DNA of 64,000 nucleotides from Octopus bimaculoides. Its lineage: Eukaryota. The translations under genes and the position numbers were made by a program. Of the stretch, positions 4,066 through 62,342 are shown piece by piece. Positions within the stretch are counted from its first letter, which is position 1, and the number at the start of each line of letters is the position of its first letter. The stretch lies in contig NC_068987.1 in NCBI RefSeq assembly GCF_001194135.2, positions 109,606,982-109,670,981 on the forward strand, given 5' to 3'. Under the pieces are notes generated by a model. That model had not been told where the DNA came from, made no database searches, and saw only the letters and a list, made by a program, of their open reading frames with translations.

Positions 4066-4840
4066 GCTACGTCTGACATTTCAAAAATAAAATGTCTGGT
4101 TTGTTACAACATACACTACTCAGACAAAATCTTAGTAGCTCTGTAGTATTTGCGAAACAGCAGTCTTGAGAAAATAGTGATAATTCATATCAAATATTTG
4201 TAGCTAGTTTACAATATTCACACTGCAAGCTTGCTAATTTAGTTATACATACTTGTTTGGTATTTTCGTTTATAAGGCAATCAGAGAATTAGGGTTAGCA
4301 TGCATGTTATTTGCGCGGTCTTCCAGATTGATGTAGTTGACGCTAAACTTGAATATCTATAGACTGGCGTTTGTAGGAAATATTGAGGCTGTGTTGGTGG
4401 TGGTTGAGAGTTTCCAGAGGGATATACTTCCGAGAAAGAAAGATTCGGCAAAACATACAGTGCAGGGCCTGGTATACGAGACACAGTAAAGTGAAGGGAG
4501 AAGGAAAGTTGAGTAGTATTTGTGGGCCTACGTGGAAGGAGTATGCAAATAACGAAATTAGAGGAGTAGAAGCCATTGCAGTAGTGGTAGGAAATAGATA
4601 TATAGATAGAGATGAGGAAATAGATAGATAGACAGAGATGAGGAGAGAGAAAGAGTTAGAGAAAAGGCGAGAAAGAGAGAGAAAGAGATGAAATGCGTCT
4701 GTGATCTAATGGTTGTAGTGTGTTCGTGATTAAGTAGTTGATAAGCTGTTTGCTTTCTTTTGGATACGGTCGTGTCGGTTATTTTTAATTTGCTAACGAA
4801 ATAGATTTAACATGAAGGACAAGCAAATGTTAAACCTTAC

Positions 4841-4942
4841 CATACTGTTCATGGACACCAGTTCTTGTTTGTGTTTGAGAAATAACTTGACGACTTCAGA
4901 GTGGTCATTTTTGGCAGCCAAGTGAAGAGGCGTTTGACCAAG
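4841..4942 (-). CDS. TRPN1: TRPN1-like exon (LGQTPLHLAAKNDHSEVVKLFLKHKQELVSMNSM); most 3' exon in window
   Basis: ttctgcag acceptor, GTAAGG donor, 102 nt. Confidence 0.94.
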
Positions 4943-5005
4943 CTGCAGAAAAACAAATACATATAAGTTTCTATTCAAGATATTTAAGATAATTTAGTAT
5001 GTTAA

Positions 5006-5263
5006 AGAAGTGATTTTTAAATTCTCAAACGCAGGATAATGCTAATAATATAGCCTGAACAGGATTAAAATGGCGGGAAGATGCGTGGTGTGGGCAGTTT
5101 AGCTTAATCGGTCTAAGAGCACCGCGACGCGTAATCACGGAGGTGTGAGTTCGAGTCTCATAGCTGGCGGCCAACACTTTTTTCTGCAAATTGGGGGTAG
5201 CTTATCCTGTTCAGGCTATATTATTAGCATTATCCTGCGTTCGAGAATTTAAAAATCACTTCT
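5006..5263. mobile_element. Non-autonomous TIR element, Kolobok-like, carrying a tRNA-like cassette
   Basis: 60-bp TIRs (5006-5065 and 5204-5263) with 1 mismatch; 5'-AG...CT-3' termini; TTAA on both sides (5002-5005, 5264-5267). Confidence 0.75.
5093..5169 (+). tRNA. tRNA-like sequence/pseudogene; nominal anticodon CGT (Thr)
   Basis: Hand-folded cloverleaf: acceptor ggcagtt/agctggc (one G:G), D stem gctt/gagc, T stem gtgag/ctcat with TTCGAGT loop; T6 at 5178-5183. Atypical 6-bp anticodon stem and G33. Confidence 0.55.
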
Positions 5264-6052
5264 TTAACTTTCTAAGACATCTCAACGGTTCTAAAAGCAA
5301 ACTTCGTTTGTTTGTTTAAGTTTATCGTATTGAATTTAACATAATTTAGTATATTTCTGATGTCAATAGACAAAAAGAAAAAAACAATTAATGAAACCAA
5401 CTGTCACTAAACTTGATGGACTAACCAACTAAAGAGAAAAGATTTTATTGTGTGACGTCGAATATACCAATTTTTGACATCGACAGGCTAGCTCTGATTT
5501 TTAAGTGATATTGCATGCATGAAGTTTGAAGGTTATAACTTAGCTGTTATATTTGACTATTACTTGACAAACCAGTTAATATTTTTACCCGTGAAGTGAT
5601 ACCCCAGTTAGTAACTTTAACTGTTTCAATAAGTTTTACTGTCAAGTAATATAAGCGTTGTGTTTTTTCTACAAGTATTTTCATGGTCATTGCTTTGATG
5701 AACTTCGTGGTTTAGTCCTTTCTGTCAATACTTTTAAACGTGTCACCCGCTTCTCTTGCCATTTGCATCGATTCTCTGTTGAACTTTTTGTTAGTCATAA
5801 TTTCTTTTATTCTTTTAGTTTACTTCCTCGAACAGCCATCAACTTGTTCTTTTTCTTCTGTTATATTTAATCCCTTAAACTTCCTGTCAATAAGCCCCTT
5901 TTTTTTGTCCCTTATGCTAAAATGGCCTCAAGAATTATTTGGGACAAGATCATATTAAAATAAATACTAACCAGTAAATTTGACTAACAAGCGATATGCG
6001 AATTTACAATTTTTGGTCGGTGATATACAATTTACAAAGTATGACTATAAAG

Positions 6053-12656: not shown

Positions 12657-12895
12657 CTGCAAGAAGAAGAGGAAAAAAGAAAACAGAAAGAAAACAATTG
12701 AAGAATTTGGAGACGAAAAAGGGAGAAAGATCAGAAAGACGAATAAGGGTTTATAAAGTTTTAACACAACTTGGAAGAAATTTGTGTAACTGATTTAGTT
12801 GACTCTACAGTTCTATATTTAAGAGATGAGGAATTATGTACATTATTTACATTATTTACATTTGACGGATATTTGTCCTCATCTTGTTTGTTGTT

Positions 12896-12941
12896 AACAC
12901 AACGTTTCGGCTGATTTACCCTCCAGCCTCCATCAGGTGTC
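12896..12941 (-). ncRNA. Hammerhead motif with altered core (CTGATGG)
   Basis: Reverse-complement copy of 13599-13644 with A9->G. Confidence 0.6.
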
Positions 12942-12988
12942 TTGGGCAAATTTCGAACCTGGATTCTCATTTCTAAGGTATTTTTCGA

Positions 12989-13059
<71 letters not shown>

Positions 13060-13598
13060 CAGTGACCTGAATAATAATNNNNNNNNNNNNNNNNNNNNNN
13101 NNNNNNNNNNNNNNNNNNNNNNNNNNNNNNNNNNNNNNNNNNNNNNNNNNNNNNNNNNNNNNNNNNNNNNNNNNNNNNNNNNNNNNNNNNNNNNNNNNNN
13201 NNNNNNNNNNNNNNNNNNNNNNNNNNNNNNNNNNNNNNNNNNNNNNNNNNNNNNNNNNNNNNNNNNNNNNNNNNNNNNNNNNNNNNNNNNNNNNNNNNNN
13301 NNNNNNNNNNNNNNNNNNNNNNNNNNNNNNNNNNNNNNNNNNNNNNNNNNNNNNNNNNNNNNNNNNNNNNNGAACAAAACTGTACAAATCCAAATATATG
13401 GTACCCTAGGCATAACACCTACATGAACTTCTAACTTGTTGTCTCTTGAGGTCTCTGGGTGAGACTTGGATCCAACTTGTACAAATGCAAAGCAAAAGTC
13501 AAACATAAAATAATAATAATAATGATAATAATAATAATAATAATAATAACACCGAAAAATACATTAGGAATGAGAACCCAGATTCGAAATTTCCCCAA

Positions 13599-26201: not shown

Positions 26202-27142
26202 CTCTCTCTCTCTATATATATTTATGTGTGTTTGTGTGTGTGTGTGTGTGTCTGTGTCTGTGTTTGCCTGCCGCCATCGCTCGCTTGGCAACCGATGTTG
26301 GTTCGTTTACGTTCCCATAACCTATTAGTGGTTCAGCTGAAGACACTGACAGAATAGGTACGAAGCTTTGAAAATAAGTATCGGGGGTCGATTTATTCGG
26401 TTAGACCCTTCAGAGTGGTGCTCCAGCATGACCACAGTCCAATGACTGAAAGAAGTGAAAGATAAAAGTTAACAGGCCTAGCTCGAATCTTTGTCGCAGA
26501 TTTGACTCTGCTAAAAGCATTTGTGGGCCATGCGGTGTTGTTTAACCGAATGAAGTATTAAGTTTATCATCCAGAAAATATGAAAGGTCCCTCTGACGGG
26601 TCTGTGATTGAACTCACAACGTCGTAGCTGTAAGACGAACTGGTTAATCCACACAGCCATTGATGAATATTAAGTCTTTCTAATTCTGGCACAAGGCCAG
26701 CAATTTTAGAGAGAGGAGTAAGTCGATAACATCGATTCAAGTGCTCAACTGGTACTTATTTTGTTGACCTCGAAAGAAGCAAAGAGCAAAGTTGACTTCC
26801 GCAGTGTTTAAACTTAGAATGTAAAAACAGGAATAAATGCTACTAGGCATTTTTGTTCGACGCACTAAAAACTCTGCAGATTCGCTGCCTCGCTATTATT
26901 CTTTTATTCTTTTACTTGTTTCAATCATTTGATTGCGGCCATGCTGGAGCACCACCTTACAGGGTTTTTTTAGTCGAAGAATTCGACCGATCTCAGGACT
27001 TATTCTTTGTAAGCCTAGTACTTATTCTATCGGCCTCTTTTGCCGAACCGCTAAGTTACTCTTTCTGAACTCCATTACCCCAGAATCTGCAAAAAACCCG
27101 TCCACCATTTGGCACCTTGGCTAGATTTGGCTGATACTTTAC

Positions 27143-31619: not shown

Positions 31620-33060
31620 ACTTCCCGCACGTATACATTGAGTATTGAGGATTAGGCTGGCGAGATCACGAATAACCCACTTTCTTGAAAGGAGCAGCCT
31701 GCTGAACCCCAACCAACGTGGGTTCCATAATGGAAGGAACTGCCTAACGCAGCTCCTGCATCACTTTGATGACATTTTGAGAGCTTTGGGAGAAGGCTCC
31801 AAAACCGATGTCATCTACCTTGATTTCAACAACGCTTTTCACAGGGGTGGTCATAAGATTCTTTTGGAAAAAAAACCTATCCAACATTGGTTTCTCTGGA
31901 AAGTTACTACGCTGGATCAAGTGTTTCCTGACAGACAGAACCCAGCACATTGCAGTCGAAGGAGTAAAATCAAGCCCGGTCAAAGTCAGTAGTGGTGTTC
32001 CACAAGGCACTGTGTTGGACCCACTTCTCTTCATCATCTACATTAATGCCATTACTGACATCATCAAGCACAGCAACATAAGAATTTTTGCAGATGATTC
32101 CAAGCTCCAGAAGGTTATCAACGAAGTGGGTGACTGGACATGCCTTCAGTCAGACCTACTGGCTGTTATCCAATGGGCGGAAAAGAATAATATGCTGCTG
32201 AATGAGGACAAATTTGAGTTAATACGCTTTGGAAAAGAGGATACTCTGAAACTCCCATACTCCCTTCACTCAGGTGAAACTCTCATGACATCCAACAACA
32301 TCGGAATCTTGGGAGTAATTGCGAACAACAACATAAGCTGGACCGCTTATATAAACAGCGAAGTTGACATGGCCCTCAGAATGTGTTCCTGGATTCTTAG
32401 AACTTTCAAATCAAGAGATATCCACACCATTATCCTTCTCTACTCTACTTTTGCCCGACTCCACCTTGAATACTGTTGTCCACTGTGGTCTCCACACACG
32501 AAACAAAGTATCATGAAAACTGAAGCACCTCAAAGGTCAATTACAAACAAGATAGATGATATGACATGCCTTGACTATTAGGGTCGATTAGAAAAGCTCA
32601 ACCATTATTCTTTTCAACGCCGCCGTGAGCGCTACATCATCTGCGGGATGTAGAAAATATTCCATCATAATTTCCCAAATGATATTGGCATCGCCTTTAA
32701 GATACACCCAAGACTTGGACCCCGTGCTATCCGCCCACAACATAAATCATACTTGCATCTCATAACAACAATACGGCACAATTATTTCACCTCAATTGTC
32801 TCCACTCTCTTTAACATTACACCAAAACACATTAAAGTAGAAACAGACCCCACAAAGTCCAAGAAGTCTTTGGACAGATTCCTTGAAGAAATCCCGGATA
32901 AACCTCCTACATCCGGATGTATCTCCGTAAACAATAACCCTCTACTTGAGTGGGCCGTGTTGTCCGAATACTGATTTGAATGACTTCGCCAGGTGGTTTT
33001 ATTAAGGTAGACATGGCCTGGACCAGTACTAACTGAAACCTATCAAAGCATCAAAGTATA
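31620..33060 (+). mobile_element. 5'-truncated CR1-clade LINE (RT domain, frameshifted)
   Basis: NQRGFHNGRNCLTQLL, DVIYLDFNNAF, SGVPQGTVLDPLLFIIYIN, FADDSK, HLEYCCPLWSPH motifs. Confidence 0.93.
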
Positions 33061-36640: not shown

Positions 36641-37286
36641 CTGAAATCAAAGGAAATATTGTTTAAAAATACAATCGATAGGATAACATTCGTAAGCTTA
36701 CACTAAGCATTGAGTAAACAGAACACAGGATATTTGAGGAACTGTATATTTAAAGCTTGTGTATTTGAGGTATTGGTTATGTAACTGTCTTTATTGATTT
36801 GATTTGGAGGAAAGCGTATGAAGAAGGTAGCGGAGAGACTGCAAGGAAGTCCTTCTGCGATCAATGAGATTGGGTTGGTTAATTACCCGTGAACAGAGAC
36901 CTCGAAATTCGAATTCAGGTGCGTCTCACGATGGAATACTGCTTTCAATATACATACATAATTATTACAATTAAAAGGGTAAAGGATTATCAATTTATCA
37001 ATAAATTAATAATTAATAATTTTTACCAAGCCCTTCGGTATGTAAGCACCATTATCGGTGTGGAACTTATTTAAAAGTTCTTATACATTTATAAACAAAA
37101 TTAAGGGATCAGCAACAGGTTGCTTCACCACATACCGAAGTTCAGAAATAGCAGCTAAAAGATGCTGAAACTCCAACAGATAGCAGTTACCCGCAACTCA
37201 CATAGGCAAAACAAGAAGAAAAATAACGAACTAAACTAGCCATAGTTAATCATAGTTAATAGTCATAGTTTTGTGTACATACATAC

Positions 37287-38027
37287 ATATGTGTTTTTAT
37301 ATTATTAATAAATTCATAAACTTATCAATAATATACTCAGGAAATCAATATTTAATATTTCGAAAGACATACATCCAATATGACGCGGCAACATAATAAA
37401 TTTAAAATTTAAAATATAAATATACGAAATATAAATATCAATATGTATAAAAATCTGAATGTAGATAAATATACGTGTGAATATAGATGCGTATAAAAAT
37501 TTATGCGTAACTAAGCATGAATATTGTAAAGTCTAAAATATAAAATATAAAAGAACCTAAAATTTAAAGAGTTAAATATCTTACGATCGTTTCGCGGATA
37601 TTACTATAATCACAAAGTGATCCAAAGATCAGCTTATCAGTAATTCCGCTCTTAAAAGAATGCCTTCCATCTCATTCTTTTGATTAGGTCATTTGTTTTC
37701 TGTAGTAATAATAATAGATAAGTGTCATTAGATGGAATTGGTATATCTTTCAATGAAATCCCTAAATATTGTTTTTCCATGTTGAATAAGTTCAGTATTA
37801 AGTGCTCGTTATATATGGAGCCAAGCATAACTTTTATAAGTAATATTCTAAAAGATGTATGTCTTTCGAAATATTAAATATTGATTTCCTGAGTATATTA
37901 TTGATAAGTTTATGAATTTATTAATAATATAAAAACACATATATACACATTTATTTGCTCAAAATAATTGAGCACTCAATATAAGTTCAGTTATATATTC
38001 TTTTAGAATATTACTTATAAAAGTTAT
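37287..38027 (-). mobile_element. Penelope-like 5' fragment bracketed by perfect 89-bp inverted repeats
   Basis: MEKQYLGISLKDIPIPSNDTYLLLLLQKTNDLIKRMRWKAFF* matches the PLE N-terminal SLKNIPIP..RMRWKA motif; 37287-37375 is the reverse complement of 37854-37942. Confidence 0.8.
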
Positions 38028-43010: not shown

Positions 43011-46000
43011 CATACGTTGAGCTGCGCAAAGTAAGTATTTGACGAAAACATACGTATATTTTTTACTAAAGTAGATTCAGAAAACATTTATGCAAATATA
43101 AACAAGTGAGGAAAATTGTATTTTGAAAAGCAAAGGAGCAATCATAATAGTTGTTAATAATTATGTTTATAGTACTAATTAATAGTTAATCATAATATAG
43201 TGCCCAACAATTAATTTCAATTATTTACTTACTGACATGTCATAAAGTCCAACTACCTATTGCCCGTAATGGGATAGACCAAGGTCCAGCGTTCGATATA
43301 ATTGGTCAGTTGAATTTAAAAACAGAGGTCAAGCTATTAAGACCGTTAGAAGAGTAGATGAAAATAAAAAAATAAAATAAATAAAAGTATGGAAAATTAT
43401 TAAGAACAATTATGATTACTTCAAAACGTTATGGCACTCTCACTCCCTCTTTCTCTAAACCTATTGGCGTATCCCGTTATTGTAAATTTTTTTTATTACT
43501 TATCCACCCTGTTACCCCCATAGATAAATTAACCCACCAATTACTATTTTAAGTTTAGTCATTTACTCAAAGTCCGAAAGCGACACATAAACAAACGGGT
43601 ATGATTTAAACATATTCAGCCTTTCATCTTCTTCTCGAGGCTCTTCTTTTCTTTTATGTATTTTTCTTCACTCTGATGAAGCTCCGTGTTCCAGATCGGA
43701 TGTATTACCAAATATAATGAGCATTATTTTAAGAATTTTCAATGGCAATACCGTATACCATTGGAAGCAGAAATAGCTGTTAGATGGGATACAGTCTATT
43801 TGTATTGAATTAAAAAATAATAATTGATGTAAGTCAGTTGTTGTTGATCAATATTTCTCCATTTTCTGTTTACTTTAAATTTCATTCCTGATAAACTCAT
43901 GTCTATCTTTGTCATTTCCTGTAACCTATGAGCATGATATGCTTATATGTATGTCCAGGGTTAACATAGGTAATTATACCGGTAGTATAACGGATACTTT
44001 TATCCCTTAGACGGTTATTCCATCGTCTAACTCTACTAGCCTATATATATATATATATATATATNNNNNNNNNNNNNNNNNNNNNNNNNNNNNNNNNNNN
44101 NNNNNNNNNNNNNNNNNNNNNNNNNNNNNNNNNNNNNNNNNNNNNNNNNNNNNNNNNNNNNNNNNNNNNNNNNNNNNNNNNNNNNNNNNNNNNNNNNNNN
44201 NNNNNNNNNNNNNNNNNNNNNNNNNNNNNNNNNNNNNNNNNNNNNNNNNNNNNNNNNNNNNNNNNNNNNNNNNNNNNNNNNNNNNNNNNNNNNNNNNNNN
44301 NNNNNNNNNNNNNNNNNNNNNNNTGTGTGTGTGTATATATTCATACACGCGCGCACACACAGACTTATATAAATTAAGAGAGAGAGAAAGAGAGGGGGAA
44401 GCAGACATATTCTTTTACTCTCTCTTACTTGTTTCAATCATTTGACTGCGGCCATGCTGGAGCACAGCATTTAGTCGAACAAATCGACCCCATGATTTAT
44501 TCTTTGTAAGCCTAGTACTTATTCTATCGGTATTTTTTGCCGAACCGCTAAGTTACGGGGACATAAACACACTAGCATCGGCGTGGGGTGGGGGACAAAC
44601 ACAGTTTCTGTCTACCAAATCCACTCACAAGGCTTTGGTCAGCCCAAGGCTATAGTAGAAGATACTTGCTCAAGGTGCTACGCAGTGGGACTGAACCAGG
44701 AACTATTTGATTGGGAAGCAAGCTTCTTACAACACAGTCACGGCTGTGCCTATATGTATATATAGTTATATAAATACAAAGGATTATAGTAATAGAGAAA
44801 CTGTACTATAGGACATGGTGGATTTGCATTAGTATGCTTTGCAATTAAGCGAAAATGCACTCAGTATTGTTAAGTACAGTAGAATGATGTTGTTTATTTA
44901 AAGGTGAGGCTGTGTGGGTCGTTGGTCGAGGTTTCTCGTATCCGGTCCTCAGACGATTTATGAAGCAGAGATTAATGGTTACAAACTTTGACAAGGTTTA
45001 TTGGTCAAACGTATTGGTAGTTAATAATGTGTGGGCAAAGGAAAGAGAAGAGAGGAATAAAGGAATTTTTAAAAATAAAAATACAAAAAATAGAGAGCTG
45101 TAAAGAAAAAGGAGACAATAAACTGAGAAGTGGAACGAAGGCAGAAAAAGCAGAAGTAAAACGGAAGAAGACGTAGGTGGGGGGCCGAGAGAAGGAAACG
45201 TAGAAGATTAATAAGAAGGAAAAGAAGAATTAGAAAGGAAAGAAGAATGACAAGCGCCATGCTCATCATCATCATCATCATTCTCATGGCTGGTAGTAAC
45301 GGGGGAAGGAGAAAAGAGGAAGAAGGAGGAGGAGGAGGAGAAGAAGAAAACGAAGATTATAATGACGAGAGAGAAAGAGATGGATAGGAGGAGGAGAAAG
45401 AGAGTGAGGAGAAAGAAGACAAAATGGAGGAGAAAGAAGACAAAATGGAGGAGAAATGAATAAAGAAAAAAGTAGAAAAATGTTGAAAAAATCCCAAGGA
45501 AGTGGTGCTACAAATGTTTAGACATTTCGGTAGATTTGAATTAAGAGGCATTTGTGTGCAGTGCAAAATTTATATGGTTTGATGGCTCAATTGACCTGTG
45601 GCTGAACAAGAAAAACATAAGTGAGGGATGATATGAAGGAGTCAAGAAGGCATCGTATGTCTTACACTATCTTTTTGTTTTGATGAATAGATTTATAAGA
45701 AAAGAAGAAATTGGTGGATTTATATGAAAAGAGAGTCAGGAAAAGAAAAAGAAAATGAACGATGGGGGTCTATGTCGTGTCATACGAGGGCGAATGTTGT
45801 AAGTCTCGAAGCTTATAGCTGGCTTCTGTGTTTTCAAGGTTTAGAGGCTATTTTGATAGTATATCTATGCACAAATACTGCAGTACACACACACACATGC
45901 ACAAACTCACACACACGCACAAACACCTCCATATGCATGCATACTCGTACAAATACAAAATACATAAAAAACATAAAAATGCAGATATACAAAAACGTAT

Positions 46001-46710: not shown

Positions 46711-47724
46711 TACTCTCTCTCTCTTTTACTCTTTTACTTGTTTCAGTCATTTGACTGTGGCCATGCTGGAGCACCGCCTTTAGTCGAGCAAATCGACCCC
46801 AGGACTTATTCTTTGGAAGCCTAGAACTTATTCTATCGGTCTCTTTTGCCGAATCGCTAAGTTACGGGGACGTAAACACACCAGCATCGGTTGTCAANNN
46901 NNNNNNNNNNNNNNNNNNNNNNNNNNNNNNNNNNNNNNNNNNNNNNNNNNNNNNNNNNNNNNNNNNNNNNNNNNNNNNNNNNNNNNNNNNNNNNNNNNNN
47001 NNNNNNNNNNNNNNNNNNNNNNNNNNNNNNNNNNNNNNNNNNNNNNNNNNNNNNNNNNNNNNNNNNNNNNNNNNNNNNNNNNNNNNNNNNNNNNNNNNNN
47101 NNNNNNNNNNNNNNNNNNNNNNNNNNNNNNNNNNNNNNNNNNNNNNNNNNNNNNNNNNNNNNNNNNNNNATATATATATATATATATATATATATATACG
47201 ACGGTCTTCTTTCAGTTTCCGTCTACCAAATCCACTCAGAAGGCTTTGGTCGGCCCGAGGCTATAGTAGAAGACACTTGCCCAAGGTGCCACGCAGTGGG
47301 ACTGAACCCGGAACCATGTGGTTGGTAAGCAAGCTACTTACCACACAGCCACTCCAACGCCTATATGTGTAGGCTGAATTTGCTGAAAATGCAGTTATTG
47401 AAATTTGCATCGGGGCTGCATAGTCACCTGGGATGTCATGGACAGAGTGTCAGAAATTCCATTGACAACGAGGAAGCAAAAGAGGCGGCAATCGTTTAGA
47501 AAGATTTGCACGATTGTATGATTGAATACAGGTATGCCTGATCGGGGTATAATCCGGGTATAATCAAGCGTGGATAGCTTCGTATATGAAAGCATGACGA
47601 AATCAATCAAGAATGTTTGTTTAAAATATTGGCTTCATATTCTTAAAGTGTATAATTTCTATTCTGCATAAGCTGCAGCGCAGAATTGATTTCATAAATA
47701 AAATCTGTTTTAAAGGGTACTTAC

Positions 47725-49400: not shown

Positions 49401-50861
49401 AATAATAACAACAACAACATCAACAACAATAACAACAGTAATTGTTGTTGTTGATGTTGTTGTTGTTGTTGCTGCTGTCATTGCTGTTGTTGTTAGGGCG
49501 GCAGAAATGTTAGCACGCCGGACGAANNNNNNNNNNNNNNNNNNNNNNNNNNNNNNNNNNNNNNNNNNNNNNNNNNNNNNNNNNNNNNNNNNNNNNNNNN
49601 NNNNNNNNNNNNNNNNNNNNNNNNNNNNNNNNNNNNNNNNNNNNNNNNNNNNNNNAATGTAGAAAGGGTAGTTTGCTGTTGTTTTTGTTTTTATGGTTTA
49701 CTCTGCTACCCAACAAATCGCTCCTACTGGAATTCACCGATGAGAAAATGTATTCAATGACCAACATTACTCTTTTACTCTTTTACTTGTTTCAGTCATT
49801 TGACCGCGGCCATGCTGGAGCACCGCCTTTAGTCGAGCAAATCGACCCCAGGACTTATTCCTTGGAAGCCTAGTATTTATTCTATTGGTCTTTTCTGCCG
49901 AACCTCTAAGTTACGGGGACGTAAACACACCAGCATCAGTTGTCAAGCGATGTTGGGGGTGGGGGATAAACAGACACACAAACACACACACACATATATA
50001 CATATACATATCTACGACGGGCTTCTTTCAGTTTCCGTCTACCAAATCCACTCACAGGGCTTTGGTCGGCCCGAGGCTATAGTAGAAGACACTTGCCCAA
50101 AGTGCCACGTAGTGGGACTGAACCAGGAACCATGTGGTTGGTGAGCAAGCTACTTACCACACAGCCACTAACATTGACAAGTTTTTCTTTAAGCTATCGT
50201 ATCGATGGCTACATAATCATGGCTGTAAATATCCTCTTTCCCTTTTAAGGTGGTTGAGTGTGTTTTAGAAGAGATTTTAAACTCTTTCTTGAAAGTCAAG
50301 TAGCAACCCAGAATAAAGGTTCTCAATTATTTATTTTTGTTTCTTTTTTTTTTTGACCTTTGGATTACTATCTCATTCTATGGCTCCTTGAGCCATTCAG
50401 TATTTAAAAGAGAGTTATACAGATACTTCTTTCAAAATTCCTGTTTTTCACCCATCCGCTTGTGTAGGTTCGCAAGAGAACTCATCGAGCGAACATGTTT
50501 CAGTGGCTGGAAACATATTAAACTATGTTAAATGTTAGAGAAATAAGCGTAGTTGTCTCCTGCAATTAATACGGCCAAGCCAAAATCTTTTCACGGACCC
50601 GTAAAATACTCCTATATACATCTAATTTACTATTTTGCATGCGTGGATTCCGCAAAATCTTACACGTATCCCCAGGGGTCATATGGAACCCAGTTGAGAA
50701 CCAGGGTCTCATAGACTCCCTCTTTCGCTCGTTGTCGTTGTCGTCACTTTTGCTGTCGTTGCTTAACTCCAAGTCATTTCTCATTGACAAATCTATAATG
50801 GAAGGTGTTACAACCGTGACTATCTTGTCTTCTTAAATTTATCTAGGACTACATCATTTAT

Positions 50862-52967
50862 TGTTGTAGGGAACTAGTAATAATGGTACACCCCACCCAC
50901 GTGACGAATGGAATAACTTAGTCACTATCAGTAAAGAGAGTACGTAGTAGGCGGTCAGAGATAGTCGTGTCTTTACTGGTTTTACTAAGTATGCTGTACA
51001 CCGAAGAAGGCGTTATAACAATCCAACATTTCAGGGAATATAACAGCGGCGACGAGGATTTGAACAGCTCACGAGGAATTAGCAACTCACGAGGAGTTAA
51101 CAAACTCACAAAAGATTTTGCTGAGCGAATTTTATGGAAAACAAAAAATCGTAAAATTATGGAAAATTTGTTGGCCGGTTTGCTCGAGTTGCAAAAACAG
51201 CATCAACAGCAGCTGAAAGAACAGCAGCAGCAGCAGCAGATAGACCTGCAACAGCAACAACAAATAATATTACAGCAACAAATGCTGCAATTATTGAAGT
51301 CGTCAGGAAAGTCATAAAAAGTGTTCTCGACAGACTGAGTGGCGAACTCCATAACANNNNNNNNNNNNNNNNNNNNNNNNNNNNNNNNNNNNNNNNNNNN
51401 NNNNNNNNNNNNNNNNNNNNNNNNNNNNNNNNNNNNNNNNNNNNNNNNNNNNNNNNNNNNNNNNNNNNNNNNNNNNNNNNNNNNNNNNNNNNNNNNNNNN
51501 NNNNNNNNNNNNNNNNNNNNNNNNNNNNNNNNNNNNNNNNNNNNNNNNNNNNNNNNNNNNNNNNNNNNNNNNNNNNNNNNNNNNNNNNNNNNNNNNNNNN
51601 NNNNNNNNNNNNNNNNACAGCAATTATGCACTCTCAAGAAAACCAATAACTTTAATGACACAATAGATATATTGTGTTAAAATTTTCAGTGAAAAAAGCT
51701 CATTGTTCAACACACGTTGGAAGTGTCTGAACATAGAGAAAAACAACAACGAGGACTACACCACATATGCTGGTAGAGTAAACAAGGAAAGCGAGAAGTT
51801 TGAACTGGACGAATTAACGCCAGATATGTTCAAATGCCTGATTTTTACACGGGAGAAAAAGTAAACATTGTCCAAAAGTAGATGTTCCGTGGTCGAGACT
51901 GCACATTGATTTCGCTGGTCCGTTAAACGGTTCATACTACTTAGTAGTGGAAGTTGATAGTTTTTCGAAATGGCCTGAAATTTGCAAGTGTAAAAAACCA
52001 ACCTCTTCAACTGTGATAAATATTTTACACGAATTGTTTGCAAGATTTGGCATCCCAGACAAGATAATGTCAGACAATGGAACGCAATTTGTGTCTAGCG
52101 AATTAATAAAATTTTGTGAAACGTTTGCGGTAGAACATATACCTACGGTGCCATACCATCCCAGATCTAATGGACAGGCAGAACGCTTTGTCTATACCTT
52201 CAAAAGAGCCCTAAGAAAATCGAATAAGGAAGTCACGACTGAGGTAGCTCTACAACAATTCTTAAGAGTGTATCGTGTGACATCAAATCCGAATACACCA
52301 GCGGGTAGCTCACAAGTAGAGCTGATGTTTGCAAGGAATGTAAAATAAGTTTTTGCTAGGGAAGACATAGCAAGATTCTTTAAAGTTGGTGAAAAGGTGT
52401 ATATGACAGCATATAAGAATGGAAAGCAGAGTTGAGAAGATGGCGTAATTACCAAATGCATAAGTAAAGTGATGTATTGGGTAAGAAGCAGAAAACGCAT
52501 ACAAAAGAGATACAGGAACCAACTGAAAAAAAGATTCGTGGAAAATGAACCAAAGAAGTTGGAGAAACCGACAGAATGGTTGTATGATACGTTCCAAGTA
52601 CCAACATCAGTGCAGGTGATTGAATCCAGGTGTACAAGTGAGAGAAAAAGAAAACAAAGTTCCTGAAAATAGAGCCAAGGGAAGAAAGTATCAATTGTAC
52701 CAAAAAAAACCCCAAAAAACCTCAAAAAAGAGAGGTGGGGGAATAAAAGATTATTGCTGAATAAAACGACACTTCCTAAGAAAAACTTAAAAGGGGAGAT
52801 GTTGTAGGGAATTATTAATTATGGTACACTCCTCCTACGTGACGAATGGAATAACCTAGTCACTATAAATAAAGAGAGTACGATAGTAGGCGGTCAGAGA
52901 TAGTTGAGTCTTTACTGGTTTTACTAAGTATACTGTATACCAAAGCGGGCGTTATGACAATCCAACA
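50862..52967 (+). mobile_element. Internally deleted Ty3/gypsy LTR retrotransposon
   Basis: LTRs 50862-51028 and 52800-52967 (TGTTG...CAACA); PBS-like ggcgacgagga; PPT aaaaggggaga; Q-rich gag start; flanks tttat/ttttt. Confidence 0.92.
51947..52348 (+). pseudogene. Integrase core fragment of the LTR element
   Basis: VDSFSKWPE, FARFGIPDKIMSDNGTQFVS, PYHPRSNGQAERFV. Confidence 0.9.
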
Positions 52968-59747: not shown

Positions 59748-61407
59748 GCACACACGTTACATTCACCCAAGCGACTGAGTACATAAAAAAGGAAGAAAAA
59801 AAAGTGGGGACAAACGACAAGAACTGAATGCAACGCTAAAATATCCAAATAGCCAATGATATTGTTTAAGGAAACCTTTTAAATGTGCAAATATTGTAAA
59901 GCTGAGCCAAAGAAAACAAACAGACGCAGTGTTATTTTGGGTTACCAGGACGAAGGCATGCCGGGAAAAAGAAAGTTAGACTTTTCTGCTAGAAACACAT
60001 TGTCATAGATGCATGGCGCATGGCGGTGTCGATATCTATGTGTGTGGTCTTACGTTCCGAGTTCATATTCCGCCGAGGTCGACTTTGCTTTTCCTCCTTT
60101 TGGCGTCGATAAATTAAGTACCAGGGAAAACACTGGGGTCGATGTGATCGACTAGTGCCTCCTCCCGAATTCCAGGCCTTGTGCCTATAGTAGAAAGGAT
60201 ATCTGTGTGTGTGGTTTCACGTTCTGAGTTCAAATTCCGCCGAGGTCGATTTTGCCTTTCATCCTTTCAGGGTCGATAAATTAAGTACCAGTGAAACACT
60301 GGGGTTGATTTAATCGACTTAAACCGCTCCCTCGAAATCACTAGACTCGTGCTAAAATGTGAAACCAAAATTTATATTCTGTTATTTACAGCTTTGAAGT
60401 GTATTCTTCGAGATATTTCGCAAAAGAGTTTGTTCACGTTTCCTCGAAACTTTCCAAAATTCTTCTGACCAAAGGTATTTAAGTCTTTTATTTGTTTCCG
60501 CGAATGTGCTGAGACCATGCCGAGGCATCGGCCCTAGTATTTACTTTTTAAGTCTGGTACTTATTCTATCGGTATCTTGAACCGAACCACTAAGTTACAC
60601 GAACTTAGATAATCCAACACCGTTTGTCAAGCAGTGGAGGACAAACACACCACAAACACAAAGACACATACACACGCATACATATATGTATATACGCTGC
60701 GCTTCCATACAGTTTCCGTCAATCAATTCCACTTACAAAGCATTGATCAGCCCGATGCTACTGTAGAAGACACTTGCCCCGAGACAGCGTGCAATAGGAG
60801 TGAACCCCAAACCTCCTACTTTGCGGAGCAAGTTTCTTCACAACATCGCCTTGTCCACGCGTATAACCATGCCAGCGCCTATATGTAAATGAAAATGAAT
60901 GTGGAATGTAAACGCGGGCAAATGAAAGTTGGAAGCAATAAAATCCTATTATAGAAAATCAGTATAACTCAATAGCAAAGGGGTTTTTTTAAAGTCTGTA
61001 CATACTTTCACTTTTACACATAAACACACTCTGCGTTATATTCAGGCCAACTTTTTCTTCTCTGCAGGTTATATATACAGTAGTACTGTTTCTACTTCGC
61101 GGATTTTCAACTATCGCGGGGCGTTTTGGAACATAACACCCGCGATAGTCGAGAGATTACTATATATATATATTTAGATATACACTCTTTACTCTTTTAC
61201 TTGTTTCAGTCATTTGACTGTGGCCATGCTGGAGCACCGCCTTTAGTCGAGCAAATCGATCCCCAGGACTTATTCTTTGGAAGCCTGGTACTTATTCTAT
61301 CGGTCTCTTTTGCCGAACCGCTAAGTTACGGGGATGTAAACACACCACCATCGGTTGTCAAGCGATGTTGGGGGGACAAACACAGACACACAAACATATA
61401 TACACTC

Positions 61408-61490
<83 letters not shown>

Positions 61491-62342
61491 NNNNNNNNNN
61501 NNNNNNNNNNNNNNNNNNNNNNNNNNNNNNNNNNNNNNNNNNNNNNNNNNNNNNNNNNNNNNNNNNNNNNNNNNNNNNNNNNNNNNNNNNNATATATATA
61601 CGACGGGCTTCTTTCAGTTTCCGTCTACCAAATCCACTCACAAGGCTTTGGTCGGCCCGAGGCTATAGTGGAAGACACTTGCCCAAGGTGCCACGCGGTG
61701 GGACTGAACCCGGAACCATGTAGTTGGTAAGCAAGCTACTTACCACATTGCCACTCCCACATGTTCATACTTATTTAATTTAATCTTATGGAAAACAAAT
61801 ATTCACTGAATTTTATCGATGACTATCGATTGAATACTGGACACGTGACTCAGTATTGAATCGAAAGAATTTGTCATTAGAAGAAGATAAATATAATCTA
61901 TTATGTTCAGAGAAGATGTGGGTTCGAGTTCCACGGGTAGCCTTCGATTTTTTTCATCTAAAGATTTCGTTAATCCAGTATTCAACAAACTATTATCTAT
62001 AACTTAATCTACTTCGTGTTCCGCCGACAAAAACGATTATTTCATATTCGATAATAATGGATTTAAATTTTGGTACAAGACCAGCAAGATCGGGGGCAAG
62101 GGTATATCGATTACATCGATCCCAGAACTCAACTGGTACTTATTTTATCGACCCCAAAAGGAGTCGGCCTCAACGGAATTTGAATTCAGAACGAGAAGAC
62201 GGATGAAATGTTGATAAGCATTTTGCCCGGCGTGCTAACAATTTTGCCAGCTCGCCACCACCATAATAATAATGATAATGATAATAATAATAATAATGAT
62301 AATAATAATAATAATAATATTAATAATAATAATAATAATAAA

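What the first reader, a model, noticed from the sequence alone, without database searches (positions are those of the whole stretch)
5002..5267. TTAA-flanked TIR element whose cargo is a tRNA-like Pol III unit
Seen: 60-bp inverted repeats (59/60 identical) with AG...CT ends and TTAA on both sides. They enclose an AAAATGGCGG (YY1-consensus-like) motif, a 77-nt cloverleaf with A and B boxes (5093-5169, nominal anticodon CGT) and a T6 terminator, with no SINE body. Established: a TTAA TSD with purine-purine termini is the Kolobok signature, whereas piggyBac ends start with pyrimidines. Inference: a DNA-transposon family may be mobilising a tRNA or tRNA-mimic gene, as a Pol III promoter, insulator or small-RNA source. 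Near-identical TIRs suggest recent activity. The element sits about 60 bp upstream of a TRPN1 acceptor.
Basis: partly seen in the sequence, partly recalled or inferred. Interest (0 to 1): 0.8.

Follow-up and report, generated by a model that had tools for sequence, protein, structure and literature searches.

The report
tRNA-like gene inside an octopus MITE
A 258-bp piece of hairpin-ended mobile DNA in an intron of an octopus mechanosensory-channel-like gene carries a degenerate threonine-tRNA-like gene as its only cargo; the structure is real, but I could not test whether it belongs to a jumping family.

Summary
There are TTAA at 5002-5005 and 5264-5267, and 60-nt inverted repeats (59/60) with AG...CT ends. 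A 138-bp G+C-rich core holds a 77-nt tRNA-Thr(CGU)-like sequence (ARAGORN; Rfam tRNA 36.9 bits, threshold 29), followed by T6. The host is an octopod genome. The element lies 59 bp upstream of an ankyrin exon of a TRPN/NompC-like gene, with the tRNA-like unit antisense to that gene.

The best reading is a TTAA-specific non-autonomous TIR transposon (MITE) with Kolobok-like termini. Its whole core is a DNA-captured tRNA-gene cassette comprising leader, A and B boxes, trailer and terminator. The tRNA-like part is not a credible decoding tRNA: it has a G2·G71 mismatch, G at position 33, an irregular anticodon arm and a low score.

The decisive test, a dispersed family that keeps TIRs, TTAA and tRNA together, could not be run. 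No second copy occurs in the window, in about 41 kb of other octopod DNA, or in the metagenome and protein collections. A mollusc survey found Kolobok almost only in bivalves, so the superfamily call is open.

This is a new variant of a known kind (compare MER6, mariner TIRs plus a SINE domain). Interest is moderate.

The parts
5002..5005 (.). Left TTAA, putative target-site duplication
   Evidence: Read directly from the sequence. Complementarity of the arms drops from 98% to 59% just outside it.
5006..5065 (+). Left terminal inverted repeat, 60 nt, starting AGAAGTG; 32% G+C
5066..5092 (+). 27-nt 5' leader of the tRNA-like unit. It holds a TATA-like TAAAAT at -27 to -22 and the AAAATGGCGG motif at 5067-5076.
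   Evidence: Sequence. The motif occurs twice in the window against 0.17 expected. The function of either motif is inferred only.
5093..5169 (+). 77-nt tRNA-Thr(CGU)-like sequence. It has an A box (TAGCTTAATCGG, nt 8-19) and a B box (AGTTCGAGTCT). It also has a G2·G71 mismatch, an 11-nt D loop, a 6-bp anticodon stem with a C·A mismatch, and G at position 33.
   Evidence: ARAGORN. Rfam tRNA 36.9 bits against a gathering score of 29. The cloverleaf evaluates to -15.4 kcal/mol against an MFE of -18.9, and the free fold has z = +0.56.
5178..5183 (+). T6 run 9 nt after the tRNA-like 3' end; a Pol III terminator by sequence
   Evidence: it is the only T run of 4 or more in the core.
5204..5263 (-). 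Right terminal inverted repeat, 60 nt, ending CACTTCT
5264..5267 (.). Right TTAA, putative target-site duplication
4965..5001 (.). Left arm of an older, degenerate inverted repeat that brackets the insertion site; it pairs with 5268-5304.
   Evidence: 22/37 complementary. P is about 1e-4 against local and 6e-4 against window-wide control pairs. It is not related to the TIRs.
5268..5304 (.). Right arm of the older degenerate inverted repeat
4841..4942 (-). Host ankyrin-repeat exon (LGQTPLHLAAKNDHSEVVKLFLKHKQELVSMNSM) of a TRPN/NompC-like gene. The element lies in the intron 59 nt upstream, with the tRNA-like unit antisense to the gene.
   Evidence: ORF and splice signals read. Concatenated ankyrin exons hit TRPN1- and trp-4-like proteins at 38-50% identity. 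Exon borders were judged by eye.

Best explanation
The element is a 258-bp non-autonomous cut-and-paste DNA transposon (a MITE). It inserted at a TTAA in an intron of a TRPN/NompC-like gene of an octopod. A TTAA-specific transposase supplied in trans would recognise its 60-nt arms. The AG...CT ends resemble those of Kolobok.

The 138-bp core is compositionally foreign: 51% G+C against 32% in the arms. It consists almost entirely of one complete tRNA-gene cassette, with a 27-nt leader carrying a TATA-like box, a tRNA-Thr(CGU)-derived body with A and B boxes, a 9-nt trailer and T6.

This layout fits capture of a genomic tRNA (pseudo)gene at the DNA level, as filler between two inverted copies of one transposon end. 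It does not fit retroposition. The cassette looks competent for Pol III transcription by sequence, but its product is too irregular to be a decoding tRNA.

Shown: the anatomy and the tRNA relatedness. Inferred: insertion by transposition, the existence of a family and of a transposase partner, the capture mechanism, and Pol III transcription.
For: - The arms are 59/60 identical, have AG...CT ends, and TTAA lies on both sides.
- The arms occur nowhere else in the window, so this is not simple sequence.
- Complementarity steps from 98% to 59% at the TTAA.
- As single-stranded DNA the element folds into one hairpin, -82.6 kcal/mol, z = -17.8.
- It has no coding capacity: the longest ORF is 54 aa, with no homologue.
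- The TTAA target plus RR/AG termini is the published Kolobok/T2-MITE signature (PMC6004289).
- The tRNA match is above the Rfam threshold and unique in the window.
- The core is 51% G+C against 32-33% in the arms.
- There is no significant direct repeat around the tRNA unit (P = 0.2), no A-rich tail and no CCA, while a leader and a terminator are present. This argues for DNA-level capture rather than retroposition.
- Foldback-type long-TIR elements are frequent in octopod DNA, so the architecture fits the host.
- A MITE built from transposon TIRs plus a SINE-derived core has a precedent in MER6 (PMC6887750).
Against: - Only one copy is known. There is none in the rest of the 64 kb, none in 41 kb of Octopus sinensis and Argonauta DNA, none in JGI metagenome contigs, and no translated trace in the protein collections.
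- Kolobok is reported almost exclusively from bivalves among molluscs (PMC10294476), and no transposase partner was seen.
- The flanks outside the TTAA are themselves weakly inverted-repeated (22/37), so the repeat does not fall to background at the TTAA.
- TTAA is common in this A+T-rich DNA, and symmetric TTAA pairs occur inside any long palindrome.
Confidence: 0.5

Rival explanations
1. The same kind of element, a TTAA-specific MITE with a tRNA-like core, but mobilised by a piggyBac-type or other TTAA-targeting transposase rather than by Kolobok.
For: piggyBac is found in all molluscs surveyed, including cephalopods, whereas Kolobok is almost restricted to bivalves (PMC10294476). A TTAA duplication is shared by both superfamilies.
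Against: The termini are AG...CT. From my own knowledge, piggyBac ends start CCC/CCY. All full-length Xenopus Kolobok copies start AG. Automated TE libraries can miss a superfamily, so its absence from the survey is weak evidence.
Confidence: 0.15
2. There was no transposition. The structure is a local palindrome (inverted duplication) that formed around a tRNA pseudogene, with TTAA at the edge by chance.
For: Only a single copy is known. The inverted repeat continues weakly for about 37-50 nt beyond the TTAA. TTAA is frequent locally, at 1.1% of positions. Hairpin structures of several kinds are common in this genome.
Against: There is an abrupt step from 64/65 to 22/37 complementarity exactly at a palindromic tetranucleotide that is a known transposon target. 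The ends are AG...CT. The outer arms are unrelated to the inner arms, which is more simply explained by a young element nested in an older palindrome.
Confidence: 0.15
3. Nested event: a tRNA-derived SINE or a retro-copied pre-tRNA inserted secondarily into the loop of a pre-existing MITE, so the tRNA-like core is private to this copy.
For: Cephalopod genomes hold thousands of tRNA-derived loci, about 17,000 in the giant squid (PMC6962438). A weak 10/13 direct repeat (AAATGGCGGGAAG and AAATTGGGGGTAG) flanks the unit.
Against: That repeat is not significant (P = 0.2). There is no A-rich or simple-repeat tail, no SINE body and no CCA. The unit keeps a 5' leader and a 3' trailer with terminator. 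The tRNA-like sequence matches none of the SINE families in the window or in the O. sinensis and Argonauta loci. Removing it would leave a MITE with almost no core.
Confidence: 0.12
4. A working tRNA-Thr(CGU) gene whose flanking inverted repeats are incidental or serve the gene.
For: ARAGORN and Rfam both call it a tRNA. A and B boxes and a T6 terminator are in place.
Against: The score of 36.9 bits is low. There is a G2·G71 mismatch in the acceptor stem, G instead of the near-universal U at position 33, two extra nucleotides and a C·A mismatch in the anticodon arm, and an 11-nt D loop. The cloverleaf is 3.5 kcal/mol above the MFE, and the free fold is no better than shuffles.
Confidence: 0.04

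Closest known systems
Kolobok superfamily non-autonomous elements (Xenopus T2-MITEs such as Xmix)
   Same: TTAA target-site duplication. Purine-purine termini: AG here, AGGRR in T2-MITEs, and AG in all full-length Xenopus Kolobok copies (PMC6004289). Small size with no coding capacity.
   Different: The terminal motif here is AGAAG, not AGGRR. No tRNA-like core is described in the T2-MITE paper I read (PMC6004289). No Kolobok transposase partner was found, and the superfamily is reported as nearly absent from cephalopods. Multi-copy status is unknown here.
MER6/MER6A MITEs of primates and other mammals (mariner TIRs plus a V-SINE domain)
   Same: A MITE whose core derives from a Pol III retroelement-type sequence and is carried passively by DNA-transposon ends (PMC6887750).
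   Different: MER6 uses Tc1/mariner ends and carries the conserved V domain of a SINE body, not a tRNA-type promoter unit. Here the cargo is the tRNA-like head itself, with leader and terminator and no SINE body.
piggyBac-type TTAA-specific MITEs
   Same: TTAA duplication, short size, inverted ends. piggyBac is present in cephalopods.
   Different: From my own knowledge, piggyBac ends begin CCC/CCY. This element begins AG.
tRNA-derived SINEs of cephalopods
   Same: A tRNA-related sequence with an internal Pol III promoter. Such loci are very abundant in cephalopod genomes (PMC6962438).
   Different: There is no body, no tail and no variable-length target duplication. The unit is instead enclosed by 60-nt inverted repeats and TTAA.
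Gene-fragment capture by DNA transposons (Pack-MULEs, Helitron captures; from my own knowledge)
   Same: Host DNA acquired between transposon ends and moved passively.
   Different: Those elements carry protein-gene fragments in much larger elements of other superfamilies. Here the cargo is a single small Pol III unit in a 258-bp element.

Membership tests
MITE (non-autonomous TIR DNA transposon) | Terminal inverted repeats | tested here: met
   60-nt arms, 59/60 complementary.
MITE (non-autonomous TIR DNA transposon) | Target-site duplication directly outside the arms | tested here: met
   TTAA at 5002-5005 and 5264-5267. No alternative duplication fits if the ends are shifted. Because TTAA is a palindrome, it could also be read as 4 more nt of the repeat.
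MITE (non-autonomous TIR DNA transposon) | Small size and no transposase gene | tested here: met
   258 bp. The longest ORF is 54 aa and has no homologue.
MITE (non-autonomous TIR DNA transposon) | Many dispersed, similar copies in the genome | tested here: inconclusive
   There are 0 further copies in the window, in 41 kb of O. sinensis and Argonauta DNA, and in JGI metagenome contigs.
MITE (non-autonomous TIR DNA transposon) | An autonomous relative sharing the ends | not testable with these tools
   ORFs in the window show only a LINE reverse transcriptase fragment and an LTR integrase fragment. No eukaryotic genome search is available.
Kolobok superfamily | TTAA target site | tested here: met
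   criterion taken from PMC6004289.
Kolobok superfamily | Purine-purine (RR, typically AG) termini | tested here: met
   AGAAGTG...CACTTCT; criterion taken from PMC6004289.
Kolobok superfamily | Mobilised by a transposase with THAP, DDE and H2CH motifs | not testable with these tools
   No partner element is available. A literature survey reports Kolobok almost exclusively in bivalves among molluscs.
piggyBac superfamily | TTAA target site | tested here: met
piggyBac superfamily | Termini beginning CCC/CCY (criterion from my own knowledge) | tested here: not met
   The ends are AG...CT.
Functional tRNA gene | Covariance-model score above the family threshold | tested here: met
   RF00005 gives 36.9 bits against 29. 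ARAGORN calls tRNA-Thr(cgt). From my own experience, this is low for a genuine nuclear tRNA.
Functional tRNA gene | Fully paired 7-bp acceptor stem, 5-bp anticodon stem, 7-nt loop with U33 | tested here: not met
   G2·G71 mismatch. The anticodon arm has 2 extra nt and a C·A mismatch. G precedes the anticodon.
Functional tRNA gene | Internal A and B boxes and a downstream oligo-T terminator | tested here: met
   TAGCTTAATCGG at nt 8-19, AGTTCGAGTCT in the T arm, and T6 at 5178-5183. Judged by eye against the textbook consensus.
tRNA-derived SINE | tRNA-related head followed by a body and an A-rich or simple-repeat tail | tested here: not met
   Only 34 nt follow the head before the right arm, and there is no tail.
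tRNA-derived SINE | Flanking target duplication of variable length | tested here: not met
   The best direct repeat around the unit is 10/13, P = 0.2.

The most novel reading that the evidence does not exclude
Octopods may harbour an active TTAA-specific DNA-transposon family whose non-autonomous members are built around a tRNA-derived Pol III unit. Such a 'DNA-transposed SINE head' would spread Pol III promoters, TFIIIC sites and 60-bp intronic hairpins through genes. In host pre-mRNAs these near-perfect hairpins could act as double-stranded RNA entry points for the unusually active cephalopod ADAR editing system, here 59 nt from a coding exon of a neuronal channel-like gene.
Probability: 0.12. 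Interest if true: 0.65.

Novelty: new variant of a known kind. Interest (0 to 1): 0.4.

Why it matters
If a family exists, it would show a route by which tRNA-type Pol III promoters multiply by cut-and-paste DNA transposition rather than by retroposition. Part of the very large count of 'tRNA-derived' loci in cephalopod genomes is usually put down to SINEs and could then have another origin. It would also place Kolobok-like activity in a lineage where surveys have not found it. Finally, it would seed genes with long perfect hairpins that matter for RNA editing, small-RNA production and splicing. If it is a one-off, it is a minor curiosity of an intron.

Tried and rejected
**Searches for further copies (all negative)**
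- I searched the window with both halves of the arm, allowing 3 mismatches, and ran sensitive blastn with the whole element. Only the element itself was found.
- The 58-aa ORF that spans the arm plus the tRNA found nothing in the 5.8-billion-protein index.
- A full HMMER scan of 1.84 billion representatives gave two repeat-inflated, irrelevant hits: a bacterial repeat protein and an unnamed tandem-repeat peptide.
- Exact scans of JGI metagenome contigs with a 25-mer of the arm and a 26-mer of the tRNA 3' half found nothing.
- A scan of prokaryotic genome contigs with a 21-mer of the tRNA 3' half found nothing, so the sequence is not a bacterial tRNA or a contaminant.

**Attempts to reach more octopod DNA**
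- An LINE RT ORF from the window identified the lineage: Octopus sinensis 65% and Argonauta hians 63% identity.
- It also let me fetch 20 kb from each species. The window's SINEs match O. sinensis at 85-95%. Neither locus holds a copy of the element or any tRNA.
- A third locus turned out not to be octopod.
- Exact look-up of ten window ORFs found none in the collection. The concatenated ankyrin exons found no same-genus orthologue. The orthologous empty-site test was therefore impossible.

**Ideas rejected**
- Assembly artefact: the region 4401-5900 has no N, the arms differ at one base, and there is a unique 138-bp core.
- The outer degenerate palindrome being an older copy of the same family: no significant similarity.
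- An internal 'empty-site paralogue' at 5316-5388: only the 22-mer is convincing.

**Literature**
Searches for a described MITE with a tRNA-type core found only the MER6/V-SINE precedent.

Full report
**What is there**

The sequence reads ...GTATG TTAA | AGAAGTGATTTTTAAATTCTCAAACGCAGGATAATGCTAATAATATAGCCTGAACAGGAT | 138-bp core | ATCCTGTTCAGG...GAGAATTTAAAAATCACTTCT | TTAA CTTTC....
- The arms, 5006-5065 and 5204-5263, are 59/60 complementary.
- Each half of the arm occurs exactly twice in the 64 kb, where none is expected. This is not low-complexity coincidence.
- As single-stranded DNA the whole element folds into one hairpin, -82.6 kcal/mol, z = -17.8.
- Complementarity is 64/65 through the TTAA and one base beyond, then falls at once to 22/37.

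That step is what makes TTAA the boundary. Symmetric TTAA, AATT and TATA pairs also occur inside the arms, as they must in any A+T-rich palindrome. TTAA alone would therefore prove nothing.

**The core**

Rfam's tRNA model gives 36.9 bits against a gathering score of 29, over the full model. It is the only tRNA match in the window even at E <= 10. The relatedness to tRNA is real.

The quality is poor in several respects:
- a G2·G71 mismatch in the acceptor stem;
- an 11-nt D loop;
- an anticodon arm with two extra nucleotides and a C·A mismatch;
- G where U33 should be.

The cloverleaf evaluates to -15.4 kcal/mol against an MFE of -18.9, and the free fold is no better than shuffles. I conclude it is a tRNA-Thr-derived pseudogene-like unit, not a decoding tRNA.

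By sequence it keeps what Pol III needs. The A box is TAGCTTAATCGG and the B box is AGTTCGAGTCT, about 33 nt apart. A TATA-like TAAAAT lies at -27. T6 at 5178-5183 lies 9 nt after the 3' end and is the only T run in the core.

The unit has a leader and a trailer, no CCA, no A tail, and no significant flanking direct repeat (P = 0.2). The core is 51% G+C against 32-33% in the arms. I infer that a genomic tRNA (pseudo)gene was captured as DNA between two inverted copies of a transposon end.

**Host and position**

The window is a draft eukaryotic assembly with 4113 N and many microsatellites.
- An LINE RT ORF is closest to Octopus sinensis (65%) and Argonauta hians (63%).
- The window's SINEs match an O. 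sinensis contig at 85-95%. The source is therefore an octopod.
- Ankyrin exons on the minus strand resemble TRPN1/trp-4-type proteins at 38-50% identity. Only the ankyrin part is in view, so 'TRPN1' is plausible but not proven.
- The element lies in an intron 59 nt upstream of the exon at about 4942-4841, with the tRNA-like unit antisense to the gene.

**Classification**

Published criteria for Kolobok are a TTAA target and RR termini. Xenopus T2-MITEs end AGGRR, and all full-length Xenopus Kolobok copies end AG (PMC6004289). This element meets both criteria, and it fails the piggyBac CCC-end rule (my own knowledge).

Against a Kolobok call, a survey of mollusc genomes found Kolobok almost exclusively in bivalves and piggyBac in all species, including the two cephalopods (PMC10294476). 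No transposase partner is available. I therefore call it a TTAA-specific MITE with Kolobok-like ends, superfamily unproven.

**The untested point**

I found no second copy in any of these:
- the window;
- 41 kb of O. sinensis and Argonauta DNA;
- JGI metagenome contigs;
- translated ORFs in two protein collections.

None of these samples is large enough to say that a family is absent. No eukaryotic genome search or orthologous locus could be reached. The claim of mobilisation is neither shown nor refuted.

**Context that tempers the reading**

- Foldback-type elements with long near-perfect arms are common in octopod DNA. I counted three in this window and one in each of the two fetched loci. 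Arm identity is therefore a property of the class, not a clock.
- The insertion site lies at the centre of an older, unrelated degenerate palindrome: 22/37 complementary, P about 1e-4 to 6e-4, with no similarity to the arms. This suggests nesting into an older hairpin element.
- A 22-nt direct repeat (20/22) abuts the left TTAA and recurs at 5334-5355. A longer 'empty-site paralogue' is only suggestive.

**Comparison and verdict**

The closest described analogue in logic is MER6, a MITE made of mariner ends plus a SINE V domain (PMC6887750). Cephalopod genomes carry thousands of tRNA-derived loci that are usually ascribed to SINEs (PMC6962438). I found no description of a MITE whose core is a tRNA-type Pol III unit, though the library is incomplete.

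I rate it a new variant of a known kind, with interest 0.4 pending a genome-wide copy census and an empty-site comparison.

Noticed in passing
window 4965-5001 and 5268-5304: The flanks just outside the two TTAA are themselves an imperfect inverted repeat (22/37, P about 1e-4 to 6e-4) and are unrelated to the element's arms. The element seems to sit at the centre of an older degenerate palindrome that includes the polypyrimidine tract of the host acceptor.
   Followed up: partly
window 4982-5003 and 5334-5355: A 22-nt direct repeat (20/22) whose first copy abuts the left TTAA. A gapped alignment hints that about 75 bp of the uninterrupted target is duplicated at 5316-5388 without the element. 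The parts beyond the 22-mer are not significant on their own.
   Followed up: partly
window 25936-26210: A roughly 270-bp near-perfect hairpin with 126-nt arms (98%) and a 5-nt loop. It has tandem TTAA TTAA near both ends and AGAAAAAAA...TTTTTTTCT outer ends. It scores against several plant miRNA-precursor models, all below threshold. Possibly another foldback MITE.
   Followed up: no
window 37284-37945: A 662-bp element with 92-nt terminal inverted repeats (99%), TGTG...CACA ends and TA-like flanks. It is an unrelated TIR element.
   Followed up: no
window 12795-13712: Two inverted SINE-like units (192 nt, 93%) with (ATT)n tails face each other across an assembly gap. The 13-nt direct repeat TTAGTTGACTCTA lies at 12795-12807 and 13700-13712.
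   Followed up: no
window 31645-32581 (+) and 51947-52348 (+): Retroelement remains lie in introns of the host gene: an LINE reverse-transcriptase fragment (RVT_1), closest to Octopus sinensis and Argonauta copies, and an LTR-type integrase core (rve).
   Followed up: partly
window 16183-16643, 44420-44767, 46727-47366, 49776-50169, 61175-61757; L001 15503-15927: One SINE family recurs at least five times in the window and matches an O. sinensis contig at 85-95%. None of the copies is recognised as tRNA-like by Rfam even at E <= 10.
   Followed up: partly
L001 12890-13120 (O. sinensis); L002 17808-18444 (Argonauta hians): Further foldback-type elements with 74-nt to about 160-nt near-perfect arms and non-TTAA flanks. 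Long-arm hairpin elements appear to be a general feature of octopod genomes.
   Followed up: no
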